Shown piece by piece: positions 1,620-61,458 of a stretch of 64,000 nucleotides of DNA. The translations under genes and the position numbers were made by a program. Within the stretch, counting starts at the first letter, position 1. Every line of letters begins with the position of its first letter. The notes beneath the pieces were generated by a model. It ran no database searches. It had not been told where the DNA came from and worked only from the letters and a program-made list of their open reading frames with translations. The DNA comes from Octopus bimaculoides (taxonomy: Eukaryota). The stretch lies in the NCBI RefSeq assembly GCF_001194135.2, contig NC_068984.1, forward strand, positions 65,562,411-65,626,410, given 5' to 3'.

Positions 1620-2770
1620 ATCATCACTTTTTGTCCATTTTCCATTTCTATGGGCCATCATGGTCTGAATCACTTATTTGGAGTTACTGCTCTCTTAGAT
1701 AAATTAGAGGACCACCTTTTATGCTTGGCATGACTTCTGTGGCTGGGTGGTCTTCCTAACACCTACTTTTTTTATGGAATGTGCTGGATACGGTTTAGCA
1801 TGACACTAGAACTAGAGAAGTTATCATGCCCTCAACAAGACATGTATAAAAGGGCCTCATAATTCAATATTGTTTCCACTTCACATAGTTTAATGGGTAC
1901 ATTCTTAACATTGTACCACATTAATGATTTTAGTTGTTACACCATAACAAAAAGAAAATGTCAATACTACTTTGTGTTGACCATCTGAATGAATACAAGA
2001 GAGGGCGATTGCAGCCTATGTAGGAAGGTGAGAGGAAGAAAGAAATAAGAACATGTTGGGATAAACAGAGTGACTGGGTGACAGTTTGGAGGAAGAAGTG
2101 CCTGAAGCATTGCACTTAATGAGAAGCATTTTATTGCCAACTGAGGTAATAACTCTCTGAGCTTTTTCCAGCCATTTTTTATTCAGGTTGTTAAACTCTA
2201 CTTTAAAAACACTCACCTGGAATGTTAATTCAGTCTTCTAGGTAACAAAAATTCTCAACAATTTCTAGAGATTGGGCATTTGAGAGAATATATTTCATAT
2301 GTATTCTTAGTGATCCTGTGTATCAGCTGCAGATGAAGTTTATCTTATGCATTAGCATTCCTGTGATTCTGCCATTTCTCTTGTTCATTCATTGTTTAAC
2401 AGTATCCTTGATATCATATCATTCAGAAATATATCGGGATGCTAATCTAGATGTTGACAATATTTTCCAAGACACCTCTAAAGTACAGAATCATATCAGC
2501 CAATGATATTACTGTCTGGAGTTACAATACTGCAGAACATGAGTGGAAAACTTCATAAATGGATCTCTTTCAATCCCTCAGAGAGGGATCATAAATAACT
2601 TGCCAGACGGAAGTATTTCTATCAACAATTTTCCAGTATTAAAGTAGGATGGTACAAACAGTTAAAATGTGCTCAAGACTGTGACAAATGTAAATTCGTA
2701 AAGTAGACAAAAGAATCTAACTACTAAAGATGGCATTATCCATATGTAGCTTGAAGAATATACTCGAGAA
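1620..2770 (-). mobile_element. Heavily decayed RTE-type non-LTR retrotransposon (C-terminal ORF2 plus 3' UTR)
   Basis: The minus strand at 2234-2272 reads SLEIVENFCYLED, matching the ..VDSFRYL.DQ motif of the better-preserved RTE at 17.8 kb. 1620-1780 resembles the family's 3' UTR and tail (tccattttccat...ggctgggtggtcttcctaac). Many stops. Confidence 0.5.
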
Positions 2771-16866: not shown

Positions 16867-16892
16867 AAAAATTCTGTAATCAAGATCTAGGT

Positions 16893-17200
16893 CAGTCAGG
16901 CAGTACTGGCATCGACCATGCTTGAATGGTACTTTTTATGTGTCACAGCCACAGGACCAGTTAGCCAGCACTGACATCAACCACGCTCGAAGGGTGCTTT
17001 TTATGTGCCACCAGCATGGGTACCAGTCAGGTGGCACTGGCAACGATCATGCTTACATGGTGCTTATATTGTGCCACCGGCACAGGACCAATCAGGTGGC
17101 ACTAGCATTGACCACACTCAAATGGTGCGTTTTATGTCCACCGGTAAAGGTGCTAATCAGGTGGTAATGTCATCGGCCATGACAATGACTTCACTTGCCT
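16893..17200. repeat. About 65-bp tandem minisatellite in the RTE 3' UTR (4 full units plus 1 partial)
   Basis: Units start at 16893, 16958, 17024, 17089 and 17154 (cagtcagg...ctggca.cga.ca.gct...atggtgct.tt.atgtgccacc.gcac.ggac). Confidence 0.85.
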
Positions 17201-18518
17201 CAACAGGTCTTCGCAAGCGCAGTTTATTACCCAATGGTAGAAGGGTACTCTTAAATGAGCTGGTTATGCTGCACTGGCATAGGCCAAGCTTACAGTCTCA
17301 TTTGGCTTGCTGGGTTTTCTCAAGCACAGCATATCTCCAAAGGTCTCAGTCACTTGCCATCGCCTCAGTGAGGCACAATGTTCAAAGGTTGTGCTTCACT
17401 ACCTCATCCCAGATCTTCCTGAGTCTACCTCTTCCACAGGTTCCCTCGAATGTTAGGGTGTGACATTTTCTCACATATGACCATACCAGTACAGTCATCT
17501 CTCTTGCACACCACATTGATGCTTCTTATGCTCAACTTTTCTCTCAGAGTGCTTACATTCTGTCGAACATGCACACTGACATTACACATCCAGCGGTGCA
17601 TACTAACTTCATTCCTTGTAAGCTTATGCATGTCCTCAGCAATCACAGCTCATGTTTTACTTCCATGTAGCATAGCTGTTCGCACACATGCATCAAACAG
17701 TCTACCTTTTACTCTGTGCGAGAGGCCCTTTGTTACCAGCAGAGGTAGGAACTCTCTGAACTTTGCCCAGGCTATTCTTATTCTTGCAGCTACATTCTCA
17801 GAGCATCCACCCCTGCTACTGACTTGGTCAACTAGGTAGCGGAAGCTATCAACTGCTACTAGTTTTTTTCCCTGGAATGTTACAGAAGCTGTTGTCTGCA
17901 CATTTTCAGTGTTTATTACCCCTGAGCATTTGGCACTCACAAAAACAATTAACCTTCCAGTTAACCTTCCTTTGATATTGCTGCACCTCTTATGTGTCCA
18001 TAGTTTACACCGGGTACATCTTATGGAGTTTCTACTTATGCTTTTTCTACAGATCGAACAGGGCCATCTACCTGAAGGGATTTGTGGTTTGTCTGCCTTC
18101 CAGCTTATTAAGATCTTGGTTTTTGCTAGATTGACTCAAAGGCTCTTTGATTCTAGACCCTGCTTCCACACCTGAAACTTCTCCTCTAGTTCTGATAGTG
18201 ACTCAGCTATTAGAGCAAGCTCATCAGCATGGCGAAGCTCCCAGGGGCATCCTATCTTGAATTCCTCTGTTATTGCCTGGAGGACTATGATGTATAAGAG
18301 CGAGGCTGGGGACTGATATTTGGTGGACCCCTACCCCTACTTGGAAATCTTCACTGTACTCATTGCAAACCCTCACCTTACTGACAGCATCTCTATACAT
18401 GGCTTGTACAGCTCTCACTAACTACTCATCTATCCCTAGTTTCTGCATTGACCATCAGATAAGGGATCAGGGAACCCTGTCAAAGGCTTTCTCCATGTCA
18501 ACGAAAGCCAGGTACAGA
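16893..18518 (-). mobile_element. RTE-clade LINE, 5'-truncated and decayed (RT domain, C-terminus, 3' UTR)
   Basis: The minus strand gives [47 protein letters not shown] (degenerate YADD), then VDSFRYLVDQVSSRGGCSENVAARIRIAWAKFREFLPLLVTKGLSHRVKGRLFDACVRTAMLHGSKT and NEVSMHRWMCNVSVH. Several stops and frameshifts. The 5' end lies next to a (TA)n tract. Confidence 0.92.
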
Positions 18519-20771: not shown

Positions 20772-20871
20772 NNNNNNNNNNNNNNNNNNNNNNNNNNNNN
20801 NNNNNNNNNNNNNNNNNNNNNNNNNNNNNNNNNNNNNNNNNNNNNNNNNNNNNNNNNNNNNNNNNNNNNNN
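20772..20871. other. Assembly gap (other gaps: 24066-24143, 27646-28588, 33211 to about 34011, 35092-35485, 49296-49457, 59880-60603)
   Basis: Runs of N, nearly all bordered by (TA)n or (TAA)n. Confidence 0.99.
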
Positions 20872-24055: not shown

Positions 24056-24143
24056 ATATACATATNNNNNNNNNNNNNNNNNNNNNNNNNNNNNNNNNNN
24101 NNNNNNNNNNNNNNNNNNNNNNNNNNNNNNNNNNNNNNNNNNN

Positions 24144-24176
<33 letters not shown>

Positions 24177-24189
24177 CCTTTATCTTATG

Positions 24190-24345
24190 CTTGTTTCAGT
24201 CATTGGACTGCAGCTAAACTGGGACACTGCCTTGAGGAATTTTAGCTAAACTAATTAAAGTCAGTCCTTATTTTCTTCTTACGCCTGGTACTTACTCTAT
24301 TGGTATCTTTTGCCAAACCACTAAGTTACAAGGATGTATACCAAC
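24190..24345 (-). mobile_element. 3' module of the composite tRNA-SINE (family B)
   Basis: gtttcagtcattggactgcagc...tttgccaaaccactaagttac matches the tail at 53845-54030. Confidence 0.7.
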
Positions 24346-45169: not shown

Positions 45170-45333
45170 TAGGCATGGTTATGAGTACAGGTGTGGCTGG
45201 GAAATGTGCTTCCCAACCACATGGTTTCTAGTTCAGTCTGACTGTGTGATACTTTAGCCAAGTATTTTCTACTATAGCCCCATTCAACTAAACCTTTGTG
45301 AGTGGATTTCATACATGGAAACTGAAAGAAGCC

Positions 45334-45336
<3 letters not shown>
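45170..45336 (+). mobile_element. tRNA-SINE family B head
   Basis: cttcccaaccacatggtttctagttcagtc...ctactatagccc...ttgtgagtggatttc...ggaaactgaaagaagccc, then (TA)n. Confidence 0.8.
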
Positions 45337-45392
<56 letters not shown>

Positions 45393-45557
45393 CATATATG
45401 GCCACTCTAGGTGTTGTGCTTTGAAACGCAATTTTATCATAGTATTTTAATTATATTTAAGGCAAATTTTGACATACTTAATAACTGATCTATGTTCTTT
45501 AATAATTTCCTACTTATTTCACACAGAAAACATTCCTAAGCAAAGGTGCCCTTAATT

Positions 45558-46563
45558 ATGAACTTGACAAAAAAGGACCTCCACTTACTTTTCTTGCATG
45601 AGTTCAAGCTTGGACACGATGCCTCCCAAGCTGCTGCTAATATCAACAGAGCCTGGGGAGACGGGTCCACAAGTGATCACACAGTACTAAGGTGGTTTCA
45701 GAAATTCTGTAGTGGTGATGAGAGCCTTCAGGATGAAGAAGGTAGAGGACGGTCATGCAGTCTTGACAATGAACAACTATGAACAAAACCCACATCAAAG
45801 TGTCAGAGAAATGTCTCAGGCACTTGGTGTCAGTATTGCAACAGTTTCATGCAATCAGAAGAAGATTGGTAAGGTGAAAAAGCTCAATAAATGAGTACCA
45901 CACGAGCTCAATGAAAATCAAAAAGTTAGGCATTTTGAAGTTTGCTCAATGCTCTTCCTGCAAAACACCAGTGATCCTTTTCTTGACCAAATAGTCACTT
46001 GTGAGGAAAAGTGGATCCTTTATGATAACCATAAATGACCAGATCACTCGCTTGATCGTGATGAGTCACCCAAACATTTCCCAAAGCCAAAGTTGCATCA
46101 GCAAAAGATTATGGTGACCATCTAGTGGTCTGCAATTGGTGTTGTCCATTACAGCTTTCTGGAAGCCACTCAGAGCATTACAGCAGAAGTTTATTGCAAT
46201 AAATTCAATGAAATGCATGCTCACTTGCAAAAAATGAGAGCTGCATTGGTAAATCAGTGTGGCCCAATTTTACTCCATGATAATGCAAAGCCACATGTTG
46301 CAAGAAGGATGCTGAAGAATTGAGATACAAGACTTTACCACATCCTTCATATTCTCCTGATCTTTCACCCACCGACTACCATTTTTTTAAAACAATTAAA
46401 CACGTTTTTAAGTGATAAAACTTTCAGGCCCAAACCAGAGGTGGAATCAGCTTTCAAAGATTTCTTAGCATCAAAGCTAATAAGTTTTTGTCGACAAGGA
46501 ATAAATAATCTCGTTGATCGATGGCAGAGATGCATAGATGTTCACAGCTCATATTTTGACTAA
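45558..46563 (+). pseudogene. Mariner transposase (Hsmar1/SETMAR-like DD34D), near full length, inactivated
   Basis: ATG at 45558 gives MNLTKKDLHLLFLHEFKLGH...TVLRWFQKFCSGDESLQDEEGRGRS. After a frameshift: KK LNK*VPHELNENQ, IVTCEEKWILYDN, LLHDNAKPH, YSPDLSPTDYHFF, ...LVDRWQRCIDVHSSYFD* (TAA 46561-46563). Several stops and at least two frameshifts. No TIRs recognised. Confidence 0.93.
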
Positions 46564-49025: not shown

Positions 49026-49135
49026 ATAACACAGATAATTTTCAAAAGTATGTTGGATGTTTGAGCAGCAAATTATTGAAGAGAAAATACATCATTTACA
49101 TTTGACAGAGATTTGTCCTCATCTTGTTTGTTGTT

Positions 49136-49181
49136 AACACAACGTTTCGTCTGATATACCCTCCAGCCTTCTTCAGGTGTC
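49136..49181 (-). ncRNA. Minimal type I hammerhead ribozyme motif
   Basis: GACAC-CTGAAGA-A-GGCTG-gagggtatat-CAGAC-GAAA-C-GTT-GTGTT. The CUGANGA and GAAA cores are intact, stem I pairs, stem II has one mismatch, and AACGTT is palindromic at stem III. Confidence 0.65.
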
Positions 49182-49228
49182 TTGGAGAAATTTCGAACCT
49201 GGGTTCTCATTCCTAAGGTATTTTTCGA

Positions 49229-49295
<67 letters not shown>

Positions 49296-49457
49296 NNNNN
49301 NNNNNNNNNNNNNNNNNNNNNNNNNNNNNNNNNNNNNNNNNNNNNNNNNNNNNNNNNNNNNNNNNNNNNNNNNNNNNNNNNNNNNNNNNNNNNNNNNNNN
49401 NNNNNNNNNNNNNNNNNNNNNNNNNNNNNNNNNNNNNNNNNNNNNNNNNNNNNNNNN

Positions 49458-49529
<72 letters not shown>

Positions 49530-49576
49530 TCGAAAAATACCTTAGGAATGAGAACCCAAGTTCGAAATTTCCCCAA

Positions 49577-49622
49577 GACACCTGATGAAGGCCGGAGGAT
49601 ATATCAGCCGAAATGCTGTGTT
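49577..49622 (+). ncRNA. Degenerate hammerhead motif (sister copy)
   Basis: GACAC-CTGATGA-A-GGCCG-gaggatatat-CAGCC-GAAA-T-GCT-GTGTT. The cleavage triplet is mutated (GCT), so it is probably inactive. Confidence 0.5.
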
Positions 49623-49799
49623 AACAACAAACAAGATGAGGACAAATATCCATCAAATGTAAATACTGTACAGAATTCCTCATCTCTTAAATATAGAACT
49701 GTAAGAGATAGTAGTTAGTTACTTCACAGGATAAGTTGAATTATTTCAGAAATGCTTCAGGTAAAATATAATCAAATGAGAATAGGATCTAAATGTTTC

Positions 49800-52900: not shown

Positions 52901-53694
52901 ATGAAAATTAATACAAATTTTTATATATATGTGAGATTAAGAGGTTAGAAATGAATGAGAAAGAAAGAGACAATATATACACATAGTTCCTGAGTTATAA
53001 TTTTCTGAAATCATCTCAGATTACTTAAGATACTTCAGTGGCAAAATAATTCATGACTTAACAAGTATTACCAAAGGACAAAATATAGTGATGTTTATAT
53101 TCTCTAAGGTATATTTAAGACAGTTATTTTATTCATTACTCTTGGTTCACTTGTAAGTTTCCATAAAGAAATGTTATCAAAGAGTCTAGGATTTACATTA
53201 TGAAATAATGAACTATAATATTACTTGGCCCAAGTATTTTCTTAATACAAAGAAATCAAATAATTTTTATGACATTTTCTTGAAAAGGAAACTTCTAAAA
53301 TTTTTTCTACTCAAAATTCTGGGAAAAAAAGAAGAAAAAAACATTAAGCAGATTCAAAAGAAATATTTGATTTTAAAGAAAAAAAAAGTGAACATTACAT
53401 TGTTGTGAGTTTTGTAATTGCTGAAATTGGAATGTTAACACTCATATAAATTAATGAAATATTAAAGAGAATTTTTCATGTAAAAACTACATTTGTGATA
53501 TAAGTTCACCAGCTTTTTGAAAGTAGAGGTTGCATAAGTAGCTACTTCTCTACAACACACATATTCACATACTCATACATAAAGTAATGATGGTCTAAGT
53601 AATACAAAAGGAACTTCGAAGCAGAATATGTGAAACAGAAAATACAGTAATTTTTTAGAAGTAACATTTTAATTAAATATAGAATATATCTTAC

Positions 53695-53768
53695 CATCAG
53701 CAGAATCAACAGAATTTTAAAGTGTGGTACTTACCTGAAAAAGAAAGAGATAAAAGAAATATTAGTTA
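53695..53768 (-). other. Candidate recursive splice site (CAG|GTAAGT at 53735/53734) with a 40-nt RS-exon
   Basis: Minus strand: taACTAAt (branch A at -28), 22-nt pyrimidine tract, CAG|GTAAGT ACCACACTTTAAAATTCTGTTGATTCTGCTGATG|GTAAGA. Stops in all three frames. Confidence 0.5.
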
Positions 53769-53777
53769 TCTGTAAAC

Positions 53778-53780
<3 letters not shown>

Positions 53781-53817
<37 letters not shown>
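53781..53817. repeat. (CA)n, read as (UG)n on the minus-strand transcript
   Basis: Direct reading; lies just upstream of the branchpoint on the minus strand. Confidence 0.95.
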
Positions 53818-53827
<10 letters not shown>

Positions 53828-53839
53828 ATATTTGACTCT

Positions 53840-54200
53840 TCTATTTGTTTCAGTCATTTGACGGCGGCCATGCTGGAGCACCACCTTTCGTCAAGCAAAT
53901 CGACCCCAGTACTTATTCTTTGTAAGCCTAGTACTTATTCTATTGGTCTCTTTTGCCAAACCACTAAGTTACAGGGTTGTAAACACACCAGTATCAGTTG
54001 TCAAGCGATATTTGGTGAGGGGACAAACACAGGCACAAAAACATATATATATATACGACGGCTTCTTCCAGTTTCCATCTACCAAATCCACTCACAAGGC
54101 TTTAGTAGAAGACACTTGCCCAAGGTACCATGCAATGGGACTGAACCGAAAACCATGTGATTGGTAAGCAAGTTACTTACCACACAGCCATTCCTGTGCC
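53840..54200 (-). mobile_element. Composite tRNA-SINE family B (head, short TA spacer, tail)
   Basis: The head at 54045-54200 (ggctgtgtggtaagtaacttgcttaccaatcacatgg...ttcagtcccattgc...ttgggcaagtgtcttctac) is joined to the tail at 53845-54030 (...cttagtggtttggcaaaagagacc...gctccagcatggccgccgtcaaatgactgaaac). Confidence 0.88.
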
Positions 54201-57144
54201 CATGCATATATATTCCAAAAATATAACTGTCAAGCAACATTTCAAGGAACCAAATAGATGAAACACCTTTAATCTAATGTGCATATATGTATATGGTTAT
54301 GCATTTATGATGGTGCATGGGTTGATGAATCATGTTTATGGTGTTTAGGTATAGGCATAGGTTCTTTTATATGCAATGGAAAACACAAATATGCACATAC
54401 ATTTTCATATATACTTCTACAATATTGTGAATAAGTGCATCCCTCAAAGTTCAATACTCAATGTTTAAATGACTTTGTACATATTGCATAAATAGATCTG
54501 CATGTTTATTGAGTGAATAAGGCAAAAAAAAGAACGTGTTTTTGTGTGTGCATATGTATGAGAGAGAGAGAGTGTAATTTTATGCATGCCTAGTGAATAA
54601 ATATGTGCATACATGAAGGATGTATATACTATTGTAATATGTATGCAATCAAATGAACAGATACTTGCCCCATGTGAAATTTCAAGAACCTTATATTTAT
54701 TTCTTCCAATTTCTACTTTTCTCTCAATCAGTTCTCTCAAGTGAACCTAATTGTTTTCCTTCTCCCTAACTTTCCAAATTGTTTTCCATCTAAATTTGGT
54801 AAAACAACTGAGCTTAATATATTGTTCTAAAAAGTTTTATATGTTATGTGTATTTTATTGTAATGGCGCATTTACTCAAGTCCTTTTCTTAATATCTGTT
54901 CACATTTGACTTATATACAGTTAAAAGGAACAACATTCCATTCTACATCCATCACACTTTAAAACTATAGCAAAATTTTCATACTCAATGATTATTTCCT
55001 TCATTAAATGTAATTCAAATACCCTAAATGAGCATTATATTGATTCCAGAAAAATAGAGGGTGCTTACATGTTGGGTTTTATAAAGAGAATCAGAAGTAG
55101 CATGACTTGAATATTACCAAGAACACTTACCCACTTATCTAGACATGTTAAGCACTTTAAAAAGTCACATTCTGCTGATTGCTAAAGGTCTAATCCTATA
55201 AACTACATACAATTCATTTAGACCAAAATCTATTCTTTTCAACAAGTAAAAAATAAATAAAAGCTGCATGTATTTTCTATGATAGAACAGTATTAACACT
55301 TTTAATGTTACTCTTCATTTCTGTATATTTTCCCAGTTATATTGTTACCTTTGAAGTAAATATTTTCTCACCTCAGTAGGCCTATTTACAGATATCTCTT
55401 GGTATACGATTCATATAAATTCAAACTCACAATATAACTAAACATAATAGAAAAGCAAAACAGATCAATGTAAACAATTTGTGCACACCTCTTTCTGTTT
55501 ACTTTGTTCTTTCAAACTGATTTAAAAATTAAAAACAATAAGAAAAAAATAAGCAATATTATATTTTAAATATGTAAGACATATTCTGGTAACTAAGATA
55601 AACTATTGTTCTTGAATAATAATGTTATGTTAGAATGTGGAAATTTGCACAAAAATAAAAATTAAAATCAGCGAAAGTTCTTCTTTTTTGTTAATAGTGT
55701 TAAAGTAAATATGCTCATTTTACACAGACACACTCACACACACACACACGTATAATCACAAAGTACATCCAGAATAATATGTTTTTCCCCTAGAGAAGAT
55801 TTTTCCAAAATAACTATGTTTTAGTAAAGGTTTGAAAGTTAGCTCTGATGAAAGTAAACTTTAAAATGCACTTCTTTTTTTTATTATTTTATTTTCAATC
55901 AGTGAAGTTGTCTTATAATGGCCAAACATTGATTGATTTTGCATAAGCAACTCCATTTTTGTATCATGACATAATTTTTTTCTACTAACAAAATATACAA
56001 AATGCACCATTTTTTCTATTTTCTGCTTGAGTTTTTAATCCATTAGAGAGAGCAAGGAAGGAAAATACCACACACTAATAAATAAAAGAAGTAAAAGATG
56101 TCAAGAGACATTTACTGTATTGATGTCATAGTAACATTTTCCCTGAAATGAAATTCTTTGGCAAGATGAAAAACTATAATAGCAATTTATGTAACTCTGA
56201 AGTAAAATGTGAATTTTTTTTTATGTTTAATTTTCTCATGTTGACAAGAGTTGGGCAGATTTTGAAATTTGAATATTTTCTTCTTGCAAAAATATGCTTT
56301 ATGACCTTAATCGCTTCTATGCATTAACCCTTTTATTTTTTTACAAATTTCATGAGTCTGCCTCTAGTATTATGATACAAAACCTCTCGTTTTAAAGTAT
56401 ATATATTGATATTTAAATATTTCATTAAAATATTATTCATTATGCGGTGTCAAAATTTTCATTGTGCAAACTGTGACCTGGTCTCTGTAAAGGTTACACT
56501 GGATCTCAGTGTTTGTGCAACATGTATCCTCTACACAACAACAATTTTAGTTGCAACACATGGTCTTGGGTCAAATCACTTGCATGGCCAGTACACCTTT
56601 CATCAAAATATTTTCAAAGAACCTATCTAGTTAGGTAAGAATTTAAGTCCCAAACACCAAACTGATGATGCAAAAATTAGTTATCTTGATAAATCCCCAC
56701 AATGTTTGATAACTTTCACAATTAACTGAAACATATGGGCCTAAGGTTTCTCAGACATTTTATCACAAGAGAGTTAAGCAATCCATCATTACATGATGAA
56801 CTACATACTTTCTTCTGAAGAAATTTTATTTAATTGACTATTTTTTAGTGTATTTTGACTATTTTTTTAGTGTATATCTTTTAACATATCACCCATTAAT
56901 TTTTTAAATCAAATTTATATACCATTAGTCCATTTGAATTAATTCCCCAAACTCATACAATTTTGTTTTATATGTGCAAAATACTAGTAACAAAAGTCTC
57001 CATAACTCTTTTTTTTCTATACATAAATTTCTTCAAATGATAATGAAGTAATGAGAAGACTATGTAAATATTATAAATATAACAGTAAACAGTAAAGAAG
57101 TCCAGATTTGATGGGTTGTATAATAATAATAATAATAATAATGA

Positions 57145-58440: not shown

Positions 58441-58698
58441 GGTGCAGGCATGGCTGTGTGGTTAAGGAGCTCATTTTGCAACTATGTGGTTTTTGGTTCA
58501 GTCTCCCTATGTGGCACCCAGGTCAAGTATCTTTTACTATAGCCCCAGGACAAACAATAGCTTGTCAGTGGACTTGATAAACAGAAACTGTGTGGAAGCC
58601 TGTTGTGTGTGTGTATATATTAATTATAGCTTAATGTGTGCGCTTTGAAATGTTCCGAAAAAGTATTATTCCATATATCTGTGTGTGCATGTGTGCAT

Positions 58699-59818: not shown

Positions 59819-60603
59819 TTCTAAAATTTATTTTGCTGCTCTATGATTAATAATGGTATATATATATATATATATATATNNNNNNNNNNNNNNNNNNNNN
59901 NNNNNNNNNNNNNNNNNNNNNNNNNNNNNNNNNNNNNNNNNNNNNNNNNNNNNNNNNNNNNNNNNNNNNNNNNNNNNNNNNNNNNNNNNNNNNNNNNNNN
60001 NNNNNNNNNNNNNNNNNNNNNNNNNNNNNNNNNNNNNNNNNNNNNNNNNNNNNNNNNNNNNNNNNNNNNNNNNNNNNNNNNNNNNNNNNNNNNNNNNNNN
60101 NNNNNNNNNNNNNNNNNNNNNNNNNNNNNNNNNNNNNNNNNNNNNNNNNNNNNNNNNNNNNNNNNNNNNNNNNNNNNNNNNNNNNNNNNNNNNNNNNNNN
60201 NNNNNNNNNNNNNNNNNNNNNNNNNNNNNNNNNNNNNNNNNNNNNNNNNNNNNNNNNNNNNNNNNNNNNNNNNNNNNNNNNNNNNNNNNNNNNNNNNNNN
60301 NNNNNNNNNNNNNNNNNNNNNNNNNNNNNNNNNNNNNNNNNNNNNNNNNNNNNNNNNNNNNNNNNNNNNNNNNNNNNNNNNNNNNNNNNNNNNNNNNNNN
60401 NNNNNNNNNNNNNNNNNNNNNNNNNNNNNNNNNNNNNNNNNNNNNNNNNNNNNNNNNNNNNNNNNNNNNNNNNNNNNNNNNNNNNNNNNNNNNNNNNNNN
60501 NNNNNNNNNNNNNNNNNNNNNNNNNNNNNNNNNNNNNNNNNNNNNNNNNNNNNNNNNNNNNNNNNNNNNNNNNNNNNNNNNNNNNNNNNNNNNNNNNNNN
60601 NNN

Positions 60604-60815: not shown

Positions 60816-60847
60816 CAATATGAGTATATGCATATATATATATATAT

Positions 60848-61413
60848 AAACAATATATGAGTATATGCATATATATGAACATGTATGTACATACCGTCAT
60901 CTACATGTACATATAGATACATATCTGGGTGCATGACGTTGCAAACAAACATGGACAAAATGGTAAACAAGTTACAAAAAACAAGCAGGCCACATAGAGA
61001 ACATATCCTTCATCAGCTGCCACCATTAAAACACTGGAGTTTCGAAGAGTTGGGGCAGGACGCATCGTTAAAATGGCTCTTCCCACGAACACAAATTAAA
61101 TTTTTTTTCTTGGAGGATAGTGGAGGACGGAAAACAAGACAGGAAAACGAAACGGTGATCCTCTATGATTTAATTTGTGTTCGTGGGAAGAGCCATTTTA
61201 ACGATGCATTCTGCCCTAACTCTTCGAAACGCCAGTGTTTTAATGGTGGCAGCTGATGAAGGATATGTTCTCTATGTGGCCTGCTTGTTTTTTGTAACTT
61301 GTTTACCATTTTGTCCATGATTTTGCAACGTCATGTACCCAGATATGGATCTATATGTACATGAAGGTATGTACATACATGTACATATATATGCATATAC
61401 ACATATATTGTTT
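60848..61413. repeat. Foldback element with about 250-bp arms (60848-61101 and 61168-61413) and a 66-bp spacer
   Basis: The arms are reverse complements with only about a dozen scattered mismatches or short indels, for example catggacaaaatggtaaacaagttacaaaaaacaagcaggccacatagagaacatatccttcatcagctgccaccattaaaacactgg. Confidence 0.95.
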
Positions 61414-61458
61414 GTATCACACGATCGAATGCACGTGTTACCTTTACAAGTAAGTTTG

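What the first reader, a model, noticed from the sequence alone, without database searches (positions are those of the whole stretch)
53689..53817. Textbook recursive-splicing (ratchet) site with a stop-containing RS-exon and an upstream UG repeat, on the minus strand
Seen in the sequence (minus strand): (UG) about 18 times, then ACUAAU with the branch A at -28, a 22-nt pyrimidine tract with one purine, and CAG followed directly by a perfect GUAAGU donor. A second donor (AUG|GUAAGA) lies 40 nt downstream, and the 40-nt segment has stops in all three frames. Established: AG|GU ratchet points with short downstream RS-exons are how Drosophila and vertebrate genes remove very long introns, and UG repeats bind TDP-43/CELF-type proteins that repress cryptic exons. 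Inference: the window is part of a giant minus-strand intron removed in steps. I know of no characterised cephalopod recursive site. Caveat: on a rough base-composition estimate, YAG|GTAAGT alone is expected about 0.5 times per strand in a window this size, so the case rests on the branchpoint, tract and second donor occurring together.
Basis: partly seen in the sequence, partly recalled or inferred. Interest (0 to 1): 0.72.

Follow-up and report, generated by a model that had tools for sequence, protein, structure and literature searches.

The report
Candidate recursive splice site, unverified
The minus strand of this octopus-like window really does carry a very strong acceptor fused to a perfect donor, with a second donor 40 bases on, which is what a recursive splice site looks like, but no host gene, RNA evidence or conservation could be obtained, so it remains a good candidate rather than a finding.

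Summary
The bare YAG|GTAAGT motif is at chance level: 0.5-1.2 are expected per window and 1 is seen. The a-priori recursive-site motif, which adds a tract of at least 18/22 pyrimidines, is expected only about 0.008-0.015 times per window. A second donor within 100 nt lowers that roughly tenfold. The site also meets the published motif criteria from flies: TT at -5/-6, a short out-of-frame cryptic exon, and a first donor at least as strong as the second.

The (UG)18 is the microsatellite tail of a SINE, and 13 such runs lie on this strand. YTNAY occurs upstream of 49% of positions, and three-frame stops occur in 16% of 40-mers.

The core inference, a giant minus-strand intron, could not be tested. 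No exon was found in 64 kb, and no orthologue or RNA data could be reached. CpG depletion (o/e 0.23) and a small strand skew are weak hints of a minus-sense gene body.

A 2-3 Gb genome should hold tens of chance look-alikes. I put real use as a recursive site at about 0.4. The main rival, an unused chance motif, is almost equally likely.

The parts
53831..54203 (-). SINE-like repeat with a tRNA-like head, an internal microsatellite and a conserved 3' body. It is not part of the splice motif, but it supplies the UG repeat.
   Evidence: It is 75% identical over 409 columns to O. vulgaris L001:3035-3423, and matches a second copy at L001:5870-6164. Partial copies lie in the window at 24144-24341, 45207-45363 and 58445-58590. 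Similarity stops at the 3' end of the element.
53782..53830 (-). Microsatellite tail of the SINE, (TA)5(TG)18.
   Evidence: The copy at about 24.2 kb carries (TA)n at the same place.
53761..53765 (-). Candidate branch-point motif CTAAT, with the branch A at 53762 (-28).
   Evidence: CTRAY in the -18..-40 range occurs at 9% of random positions.
53738..53759 (-). Polypyrimidine tract, 21/22 pyrimidines, with TT at -5/-6 and no AG back to the branch A.
   Evidence: A tract of at least 21/22 occurs at 0.15% of positions and one of at least 18/22 at 1.5%.
53729..53737 (-). Juxtaposed acceptor|donor CAG|GTAAGT. The junction is 53735|53734, the candidate ratchet point.
   Evidence: It is the only YAG|GTAAGT in the window on either strand.
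53695..53734 (-). 40-nt candidate cryptic RS-exon. It is not a multiple of 3 and has stops in all three frames.
53689..53694 (-). Second donor ATG|GTAAGA. It matches the consensus less well than the first donor.

Best explanation
The site is a candidate intronic recursive splice site: a ratchet point with a short cryptic RS-exon on the minus strand.

Proposed mechanism, all of it inferred:
1. If the minus strand is transcribed as part of a long intron, U2AF/U2 bind the very strong tract, the CAG and the CTAAT branch.
2. U1 binds the GTAAGA donor 40 nt downstream, so the 40-nt segment is defined as an exon.
3. The upstream exon is spliced to 53734.
4. That junction rebuilds a 5' splice site, xxx|GTAAGT. 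It out-competes the weaker GTAAGA donor.
5. The 40-nt stop-containing segment and the rest of the intron are then removed, leaving no trace in the mRNA.

Shown here: the motif anatomy, its rarity under composition-matched nulls, and its independence from the neighbouring SINE.

Not shown: transcription, the host gene, strand, use of the junctions, or conservation.

The (UG)18 is an accident of a SINE insertion. It is not required by the model, although it could bind a TDP-43-like repressor.
For: - Anatomy is confirmed.
- The composite motif is expected about 0.008-0.015 times per 64-kb window, and about 0.0007 at the observed tract strength. Adding a second donor within 100 nt multiplies this by about 0.1.
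- It is the top-ranked pyrimidine tract among all 315 AG|GT sites.
- It matches the published criteria. [quoted passage not shown]
- 99.5% of fly ratchet points have TT at -5/-6 and a prominent pyrimidine tract (bioRxiv 10.1101/006163).
- Recursive 3' splice sites are stronger than ordinary ones (PMC6110457).
- The competition model between the two donors is described in PMC6224609.
- The motif lies outside the SINE, in sequence that is single-copy within the window.
- The RNA around it is unstructured, z +1.4.
- No exon was detected in 64 kb, which is compatible with a giant intron.
- CpG o/e is 0.23 in every 8-kb bin, with a TpG/CpA excess. In O. bimaculoides methylation is reported to be clustered on gene bodies and low in intergenic DNA and transposons (PMC9476566).
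- After masking, the minus strand has G>C by 3.1% and T>A by 1.5%. That is the direction seen on the sense strand of mammalian genes (my own knowledge, uncalibrated for octopus).
Against: - There is no direct evidence that the minus strand is transcribed or that a host gene exists.
- Absence of exons fits intergenic DNA equally well.
- No conservation test was possible, yet conservation is the hallmark of fly ratchet points.
- In a genome of about 2.7 Gb (my own knowledge of octopus genome size) the same null gives roughly 300-600 chance sites with the basic composite. It gives about 35-70 with a second donor and a few at the observed strength. So one instance found by a scan is not decisive.
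- Only about half of a large animal genome is intronic (PMC5534336), hence roughly a quarter per strand.
- Thresholds were partly chosen after seeing the site.
- The CpG and skew hints lack a genome-wide baseline. A 6.4-kb O. vulgaris locus already has CpG o/e 0.36.
- No second recursive-like site occurs on the minus strand of the window.
Confidence: 0.4

Rival explanations
1. It is a fortuitous motif in non-functional DNA. A T-rich stretch that happens to end in CAG sits next to one of about 29 GTAAGT hexamers in an AT-rich, repeat-rich, gene-poor window. It is either not transcribed on this strand or never used.
For: - Bare YAG|GTAAGT is at chance level.
- 34 strong acceptor-like YAG sites and 29 GTAAGT hexamers exist in the window.
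- Genome-wide, tens to hundreds of such composites are expected by chance (extrapolated).
- The finding was picked out by a scan, so selection bias applies.
- No gene, exon or RNA family was found.
- Several listed supports are uninformative: the branch motif at 49%, three-frame stops at 16%, and a UG repeat that is a SINE tail.
Against: - For this single window the a-priori composite has p of about 0.01, and with the second donor about 0.001.
- All independent motif criteria from the literature are met at once.
- CpG depletion and strand skew lean towards a minus-sense gene body.
Confidence: 0.38
2. It is an ordinary short cassette, poison or non-coding exon (53734..53695) that merely begins with GTAAGT. 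The exon would be included in some transcripts using the GTAAGA donor, possibly held down by a UG-repeat-binding protein, in the manner of TDP-43-repressed cryptic exons.
For: - A strong acceptor and a usable donor 40 nt apart fit exon definition.
- In vertebrates many annotated exons start with a donor-like sequence and are nevertheless included (PMC6224609).
- (UG)18 lies 46 nt upstream, and TDP-43 is described as a repressor of non-conserved cryptic exons (PMC5289002 abstract).
Against: - The exon is 40 nt, out of frame and has stops in all frames. It could only be a UTR, lncRNA or NMD-targeting exon.
- GTAAGT is the better donor, which predicts skipping under the competition model.
- The UG repeat is explained by the SINE and is common on this strand.
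- The same lack of transcript evidence applies.
Confidence: 0.12
3. It is a relic carried by a repeat or a gene fragment. The acceptor|donor would belong to an unrecognised transposable element or an unprocessed pseudogene fragment present in many genomic copies.
For: The site sits 16 nt from a SINE tail, in a window full of TE debris: a mariner, a LINE fragment, SINEs and palindromes.
Against: - 53689-53780 has no second copy in the window.
- Similarity to two O. vulgaris SINE copies ends at the SINE 3' end and does not extend into the motif.
- The + strand ORF across the site found no relatives covering that part.
Confidence: 0.05

Closest known systems
Drosophila intronic ratchet points with cryptic RS-exons (Ubx, kuz, Bx; Duff et al., Joseph et al., Pai et al.)
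   Same: - A juxtaposed (Y)nCAG|GTAAGT.
- TT at -5/-6 and an exceptionally strong pyrimidine tract.
- A short (about 50 nt) out-of-frame cryptic exon with a weaker downstream donor.
   Different: - No evidence here of a host long intron, of junction, sawtooth or lariat reads, or of the strong conservation that defines the fly sites.
- The organism is an octopus-like mollusc, in which no recursive site is described in the searched literature.
Vertebrate recursive splicing via RS-exons in long neuronal genes (Sibley et al. 2015; Blazquez et al. 2018)
   Same: - An RS-exon defined first.
- A reconstituted 5' splice site that competes with the RS-exon's own donor.
- Inclusion that would introduce stop codons.
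   Different: - Vertebrate cases were established from RNA data in genes with very long introns.
- Whether this locus is in such a gene, and EJC-dependent repression, are both untestable here.
TDP-43-repressed cryptic exons and the CFTR exon 9 (UG)m(U)n acceptor
   Same: A long UG repeat just upstream of a pyrimidine tract and acceptor of a short stop-containing exon. The CFTR comparison is from my own knowledge.
   Different: - Here the UG repeat is a SINE tail 46 nt from the AG, and it is one of 13 such runs on this strand.
- No protein binding or repression has been tested.

Membership tests
Intronic recursive splice site (ratchet point with cryptic RS-exon) | Acceptor and donor consensus juxtaposed around AG|GT | tested here: met
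   CAG|GTAAGT lies at 53737..53729 and is the only YAG|GTAAGT in the window.
Intronic recursive splice site (ratchet point with cryptic RS-exon) | Unusually strong pyrimidine tract with TT at -5/-6 and a plausible branch point | tested here: met
   The tract is 21/22 pyrimidines, the best of 315 AG|GT sites. TT is present at -5/-6, CTAAT places a branch A at -28, and no AG intervenes.
Intronic recursive splice site (ratchet point with cryptic RS-exon) | Short downstream cryptic exon (about 50 nt) ending in its own donor, out of frame or stop-containing | tested here: met
   The segment is 40 nt, ends ATG|GTAAGA and has stops in three frames.
Intronic recursive splice site (ratchet point with cryptic RS-exon) | Reconstituted donor stronger than the RS-exon donor | tested here: inconclusive
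   GTAAGT matches the consensus at +1..+6, whereas GTAAGA mismatches at +6 and its exon end ATG mismatches at -2. Positions -3..-1 of the reconstituted site depend on an unknown upstream exon. No MaxEnt-type scorer was available.
Intronic recursive splice site (ratchet point with cryptic RS-exon) | Lies in a long intron, on the sense strand of an expressed gene | not testable with these tools
   No exon was detected: 75 candidate ORFs gave 0 hits. There is no annotation access. The only hints are indirect: CpG o/e 0.23 and a minus-strand G/T excess.
Intronic recursive splice site (ratchet point with cryptic RS-exon) | Acceptor|donor core conserved across related species | not testable with these tools
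   No orthologous locus was retrievable.
Intronic recursive splice site (ratchet point with cryptic RS-exon) | Junction reads, sawtooth coverage and lariats in total or nascent RNA | not testable with these tools
   No RNA-seq data are accessible.
UG-repeat (TDP-43-type) repressed cryptic exon | UG repeat next to a cryptic exon with usable splice sites | tested here: met
   (UG)18 ends 46 nt upstream of the AG. However, it is a SINE tail, and 13 such runs lie on this strand.
UG-repeat (TDP-43-type) repressed cryptic exon | Exon inclusion rises when the UG-binding repressor is lost | not testable with these tools
   This needs a knock-down experiment plus RNA-seq.

The most novel reading that the evidence does not exclude
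This is a working recursive splice site in a cephalopod giant intron, the first outside flies and vertebrates. A SINE-derived (UG)18 would have been co-opted as a binding platform for a TDP-43/CELF-type protein, which would tune whether the 40-nt stop-containing RS-exon is skipped or included.
Probability: 0.06. Interest if true: 0.6.

Novelty: new member of a known kind. Interest (0 to 1): 0.3.

Why it matters
Recursive splicing is documented in Drosophila and vertebrates. The literature searches here found no paper describing it in cephalopods or other molluscs. Octopus genomes are large and have long introns. A validated site would extend the mechanism to lophotrochozoans and give a concrete locus for testing how such introns are processed.

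As it stands this is one well-formed motif without transcript evidence. Its main value is as a template for a genome-wide search: composite motif counts in sense versus antisense long introns would show whether octopus maintains such sites at all.

Tried and rejected
1. Rfam at gathering thresholds over the whole window and ARAGORN found nothing. A permissive Rfam scan of 53600-54300 gave only UG-repeat-driven matches far below threshold. A structured-RNA reading is rejected, and the fold is weaker than shuffles, z +1.4.
2. I asked whether the motif is part of a repeat. The window self-BLAST and alignments to two O. vulgaris SINE copies show it is outside the SINE and single-copy in the window.
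3. Exon hunt. I listed six-frame ORFs, GC peaks, single-copy filtering and a crude splice-flank scorer. 75 candidate ORFs (4317 aa) were concatenated and searched, with no hit at E <= 1e-3. An earlier 11.8-kaa concatenate was not submitted, because the word-filter cap would have swamped it.
4. Attempts to reach an orthologous locus all failed.
   - The protein search of the + strand ORF spanning the site gave 4 hits, all to the SINE part only.
   - An exact look-up of 10 window ORFs found none in the collection.
   - A mariner pseudo-protein, used as a neighbouring anchor, gave a best identity of 61% and no octopus copy.
   - Two metagenome scans gave 0 hits and then 2 unrelated contigs.
5. 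Pfam on TE-like ORFs confirmed a mariner (HTH_48, Transposase_1) and a zinc-finger-bearing LINE fragment, but gave no host-gene clue.
6. A genome-wide CpG o/e baseline for octopus was not found in PMC9476566, so the CpG argument stays uncalibrated.

Full report
**Observation.** On the minus strand the window reads (TA)5(TG)18 at 53830..53782, then a 16-nt spacer, then CTAAT at 53765..53761 with a candidate branch A at 53762, position -28. Next comes the tract TTTCTTTTATCTCTTTCTTTTT at 53759..53738, which is 21 of 22 pyrimidines, has TT at -5/-6 and has no AG back to the branch A. CAG at 53737..53735 is fused to GTAAGT at 53734..53729. A 40-nt segment (53734..53695) carries stops in all three frames and ends ATG|GTAAGA, with that GT at 53694.

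**Is it more than chance?** The bare motif YAG|GTAAGT occurs once in the window on both strands together. The a-priori recursive-site motif also demands a strong pyrimidine tract, and that changes the picture.
- Only 1.5% of positions in this window have at least 18/22 pyrimidines in the equivalent 22 nt, and 0.15% have at least 21/22.
- Simulations give 0-0.01 composites per window.
- An independent empirical estimate gives 0.008. It multiplies 34 YAG sites with at least 18/22 pyrimidines by a GTAAGT density of 2.4e-4 per nt. At the observed tract strength the estimate is 0.0007.
- Of the 315 AG|GT sites in the window this one has the best tract. It is the only AG|GTRAG site above 12/22.
- A GTRAG donor 20-100 nt downstream occurs at 10.6% of positions, and one 20-60 nt downstream at 5.6%.

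YTNAY in the branch range occurs at 49% of positions and the stricter CTRAY at 9%. Three-frame stops occur in 16% of random 40-mers.

For this one window the composite is therefore unlikely by chance, roughly 1 in 100, or 1 in 1000 with the second donor. Octopus genomes are about 2.7 Gb (my own knowledge). Scaled to that size, the same null predicts several hundred basic composites, tens with a second donor, and a few at the observed strength. The site was also selected by a scan. The statistics make it a good candidate, not a demonstrated element.

**The UG repeat.** 53831..54203 (minus sense) is a SINE-like repeat.
- It aligns at 75% identity over 409 columns to a locus on an Octopus vulgaris chromosome, L001:3035-3423. 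That locus was reached through the only named protein hit to the + strand ORF across the region.
- It also matches a second copy in that locus and partial copies in the window at 24144-24341, 45207-45363 and 58445-58590.
- In the three-way alignment, similarity runs from a tRNA-like head through an internal microsatellite to ...GAAATGACTGAAACAAGTAAAAGAGT and then stops. Beyond that point the three sequences are unrelated.
- The copy at 24.2 kb carries (TA)n where this copy carries (TA)5(TG)18.

The UG repeat is therefore the microsatellite tail of a SINE. The branch motif, tract and AG|GT lie in unique flanking DNA that begins 16 nt after it. (UG) runs of at least 6 units occur 13 times on the minus strand of this window. 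The repeat is not evidence for a purpose-built regulator site, though binding of a TDP-43-like protein is not excluded.

**Surroundings.** The window is 30% G+C, has seven assembly gaps (3203 N) and is rich in microsatellites and TE debris.
- A frameshifted mariner lies at 45540-46560. It hits Pfam HTH_48 and Transposase_1, and its best protein identity is 61%.
- A LINE fragment lies at about 17.4-18.4 kb.
- Two long palindromes are present.
- No Rfam family or tRNA was found.

I looked for exons by ORF length, GC peaks, single-copy status and splice-like flanks. I then searched 75 candidate ORFs (4317 aa, concatenated) against 5.8 billion proteins. Nothing scored E <= 1e-3. No coding exon is detectable, which fits a giant intron and intergenic DNA equally well.

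**Indirect hints about transcription.**
- CpG o/e is 0.23 overall and 0.10-0.33 in every 8-kb bin, with GpC at 1.15 and TpG/CpA at 1.32. In O. bimaculoides fewer than 10% of CpGs are methylated. Those are clustered on the bodies of broadly expressed genes, while intergenic DNA and transposons are poorly methylated (PMC9476566). Uniform CpG decay would then point to a gene body. I found no genome-wide baseline, and a 6.4-kb O. vulgaris locus already shows 0.36.
- After masking simple repeats and TEs, the minus strand has G>C by 3.1% (z 4.0) and T>A by 1.5% (z 2.8), in the same direction in 6 of 8 bins for each. This is the polarity of the sense strand in mammalian genes (my own knowledge) and is uncalibrated for cephalopods.

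Both hints lean towards a minus-sense gene body, but they are weak.

**Comparison with known recursive sites.**
- Fly ratchet points are tandem acceptor|donor motifs in long introns. [quoted passage not shown] The exon is skipped because the ratchet-point donor out-competes the RS-exon donor. The acceptor|donor core itself is ultraconserved (PMC8605326).
- 99.5% of 197 ratchet points have TT at -5/-6 and a more prominent pyrimidine tract than ordinary introns (bioRxiv 10.1101/006163).
- Recursive 3' splice sites are stronger than ordinary ones. The authors note that many recursive sites could be functionally neutral (PMC6110457).
- Vertebrates use the same RS-exon logic (PMC6224609).

The present site meets every sequence-level criterion. 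Donor competition is only inferable, because positions -3..-1 of the rebuilt donor depend on an unknown upstream exon. The defining functional criteria could not be tested here: location in a sense long intron, conservation, and junction, sawtooth or lariat reads.

**Attempts to obtain related sequence.** All of these failed to reach an orthologous locus.
- The + strand ORF across the site gave four hits, all to the SINE part.
- Ten window ORFs are not in the protein collection.
- The neighbouring mariner found no octopus copy.
- Two metagenome scans returned nothing, then two unrelated contigs.

I weighed two lines of reasoning.
- A ratio argument compares chance composites genome-wide with a plausible but unknown number of maintained recursive sites. 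It gives roughly even odds.
- A mechanistic argument multiplies P(sense-intronic), about 0.25-0.5, by P(used if so), which is high. It gives about 0.3.

My estimates are:

| Reading | Probability |
|---|---|
| Site is used as a recursive splice site | about 0.4 |
| Unused chance motif | 0.38 |
| Ordinary short non-coding or poison exon | 0.12 |
| Repeat or pseudogene relic | 0.05 |

If real, it would be a new member of a known kind: the first recursive site described in a cephalopod, since the literature searches found none. It would not be a new mechanism. Interest is modest until annotation, RNA-seq and cross-species alignment are consulted.

Noticed in passing
window 53831-54203 (-); partial copies at 24144-24341, 45207-45363, 58445-58590, 27144-27285, 34382-34497: A SINE-like family with a tRNA-like head (GGTTCAGTCCC box), an internal microsatellite and a variable microsatellite tail. 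It is 75% identical to copies on an O. vulgaris chromosome. Its head carries TGG|GTAAGT (54180), so every copy seeds a perfect donor-like hexamer.
   Followed up: partly
window 45540-46560 (+): A frameshifted mariner (Mos1/Hsmar1-type) transposase pseudogene with HTH_48 and Transposase_1 domains. The closest proteins are 59-61% identical: a Logan contig and the amphipod Trinorchestia longiramus. No octopus copy appeared among the hits.
   Followed up: partly
window 60844-61417 and 49088-49670: Two large near-perfect palindromes. The first has arms of at least 155 nt at 97% complementarity with a 66-nt loop. The second has 291-nt arms at 94%, centred on an assembly gap and flanked by (TTA)n. 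They could be foldback elements or assembly artefacts.
   Followed up: partly
whole window: CpG o/e is 0.23 in all 8-kb bins, with a TpG/CpA excess. A consistent strand asymmetry is also present: C>G and A>T on the + strand, and (AC)n runs outnumber (GT)n runs 13:6. This suggests long-term germline methylation and a strand-biased process such as transcription, but there is no genome baseline.
   Followed up: partly
window 17385-18421 (-), 1933-2237 (-): LINE reverse-transcriptase C-terminal fragments. One has a PHD/C1-like zinc finger (Pfam E 1.8e-5). A G+C-rich (about 50%) repeated segment lies upstream at 16880-17460, with similar pieces at 34875-35087.
   Followed up: no
L002 656-706 (-) (metagenome contig Ga0209629_10303018): An unrelated 46% G+C contig carries the same architecture, CGCTTTTTCAG|GTAAGTAC...CTG|GTAAGTAC, with donors 39 nt apart. 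It may be a recursive-type site of some eukaryote in a metagenome, or a chance pattern match.
   Followed up: no
window 20772-20871, 24066-24143, 27646-28588, 33211-34012, 35092-35485, 49296-49457, 59880-60603: Seven sized assembly gaps, most of them bordered by (TA)n or other microsatellites. The assembly breaks at simple repeats, so local repeat structure near the gaps is unreliable.
   Followed up: no
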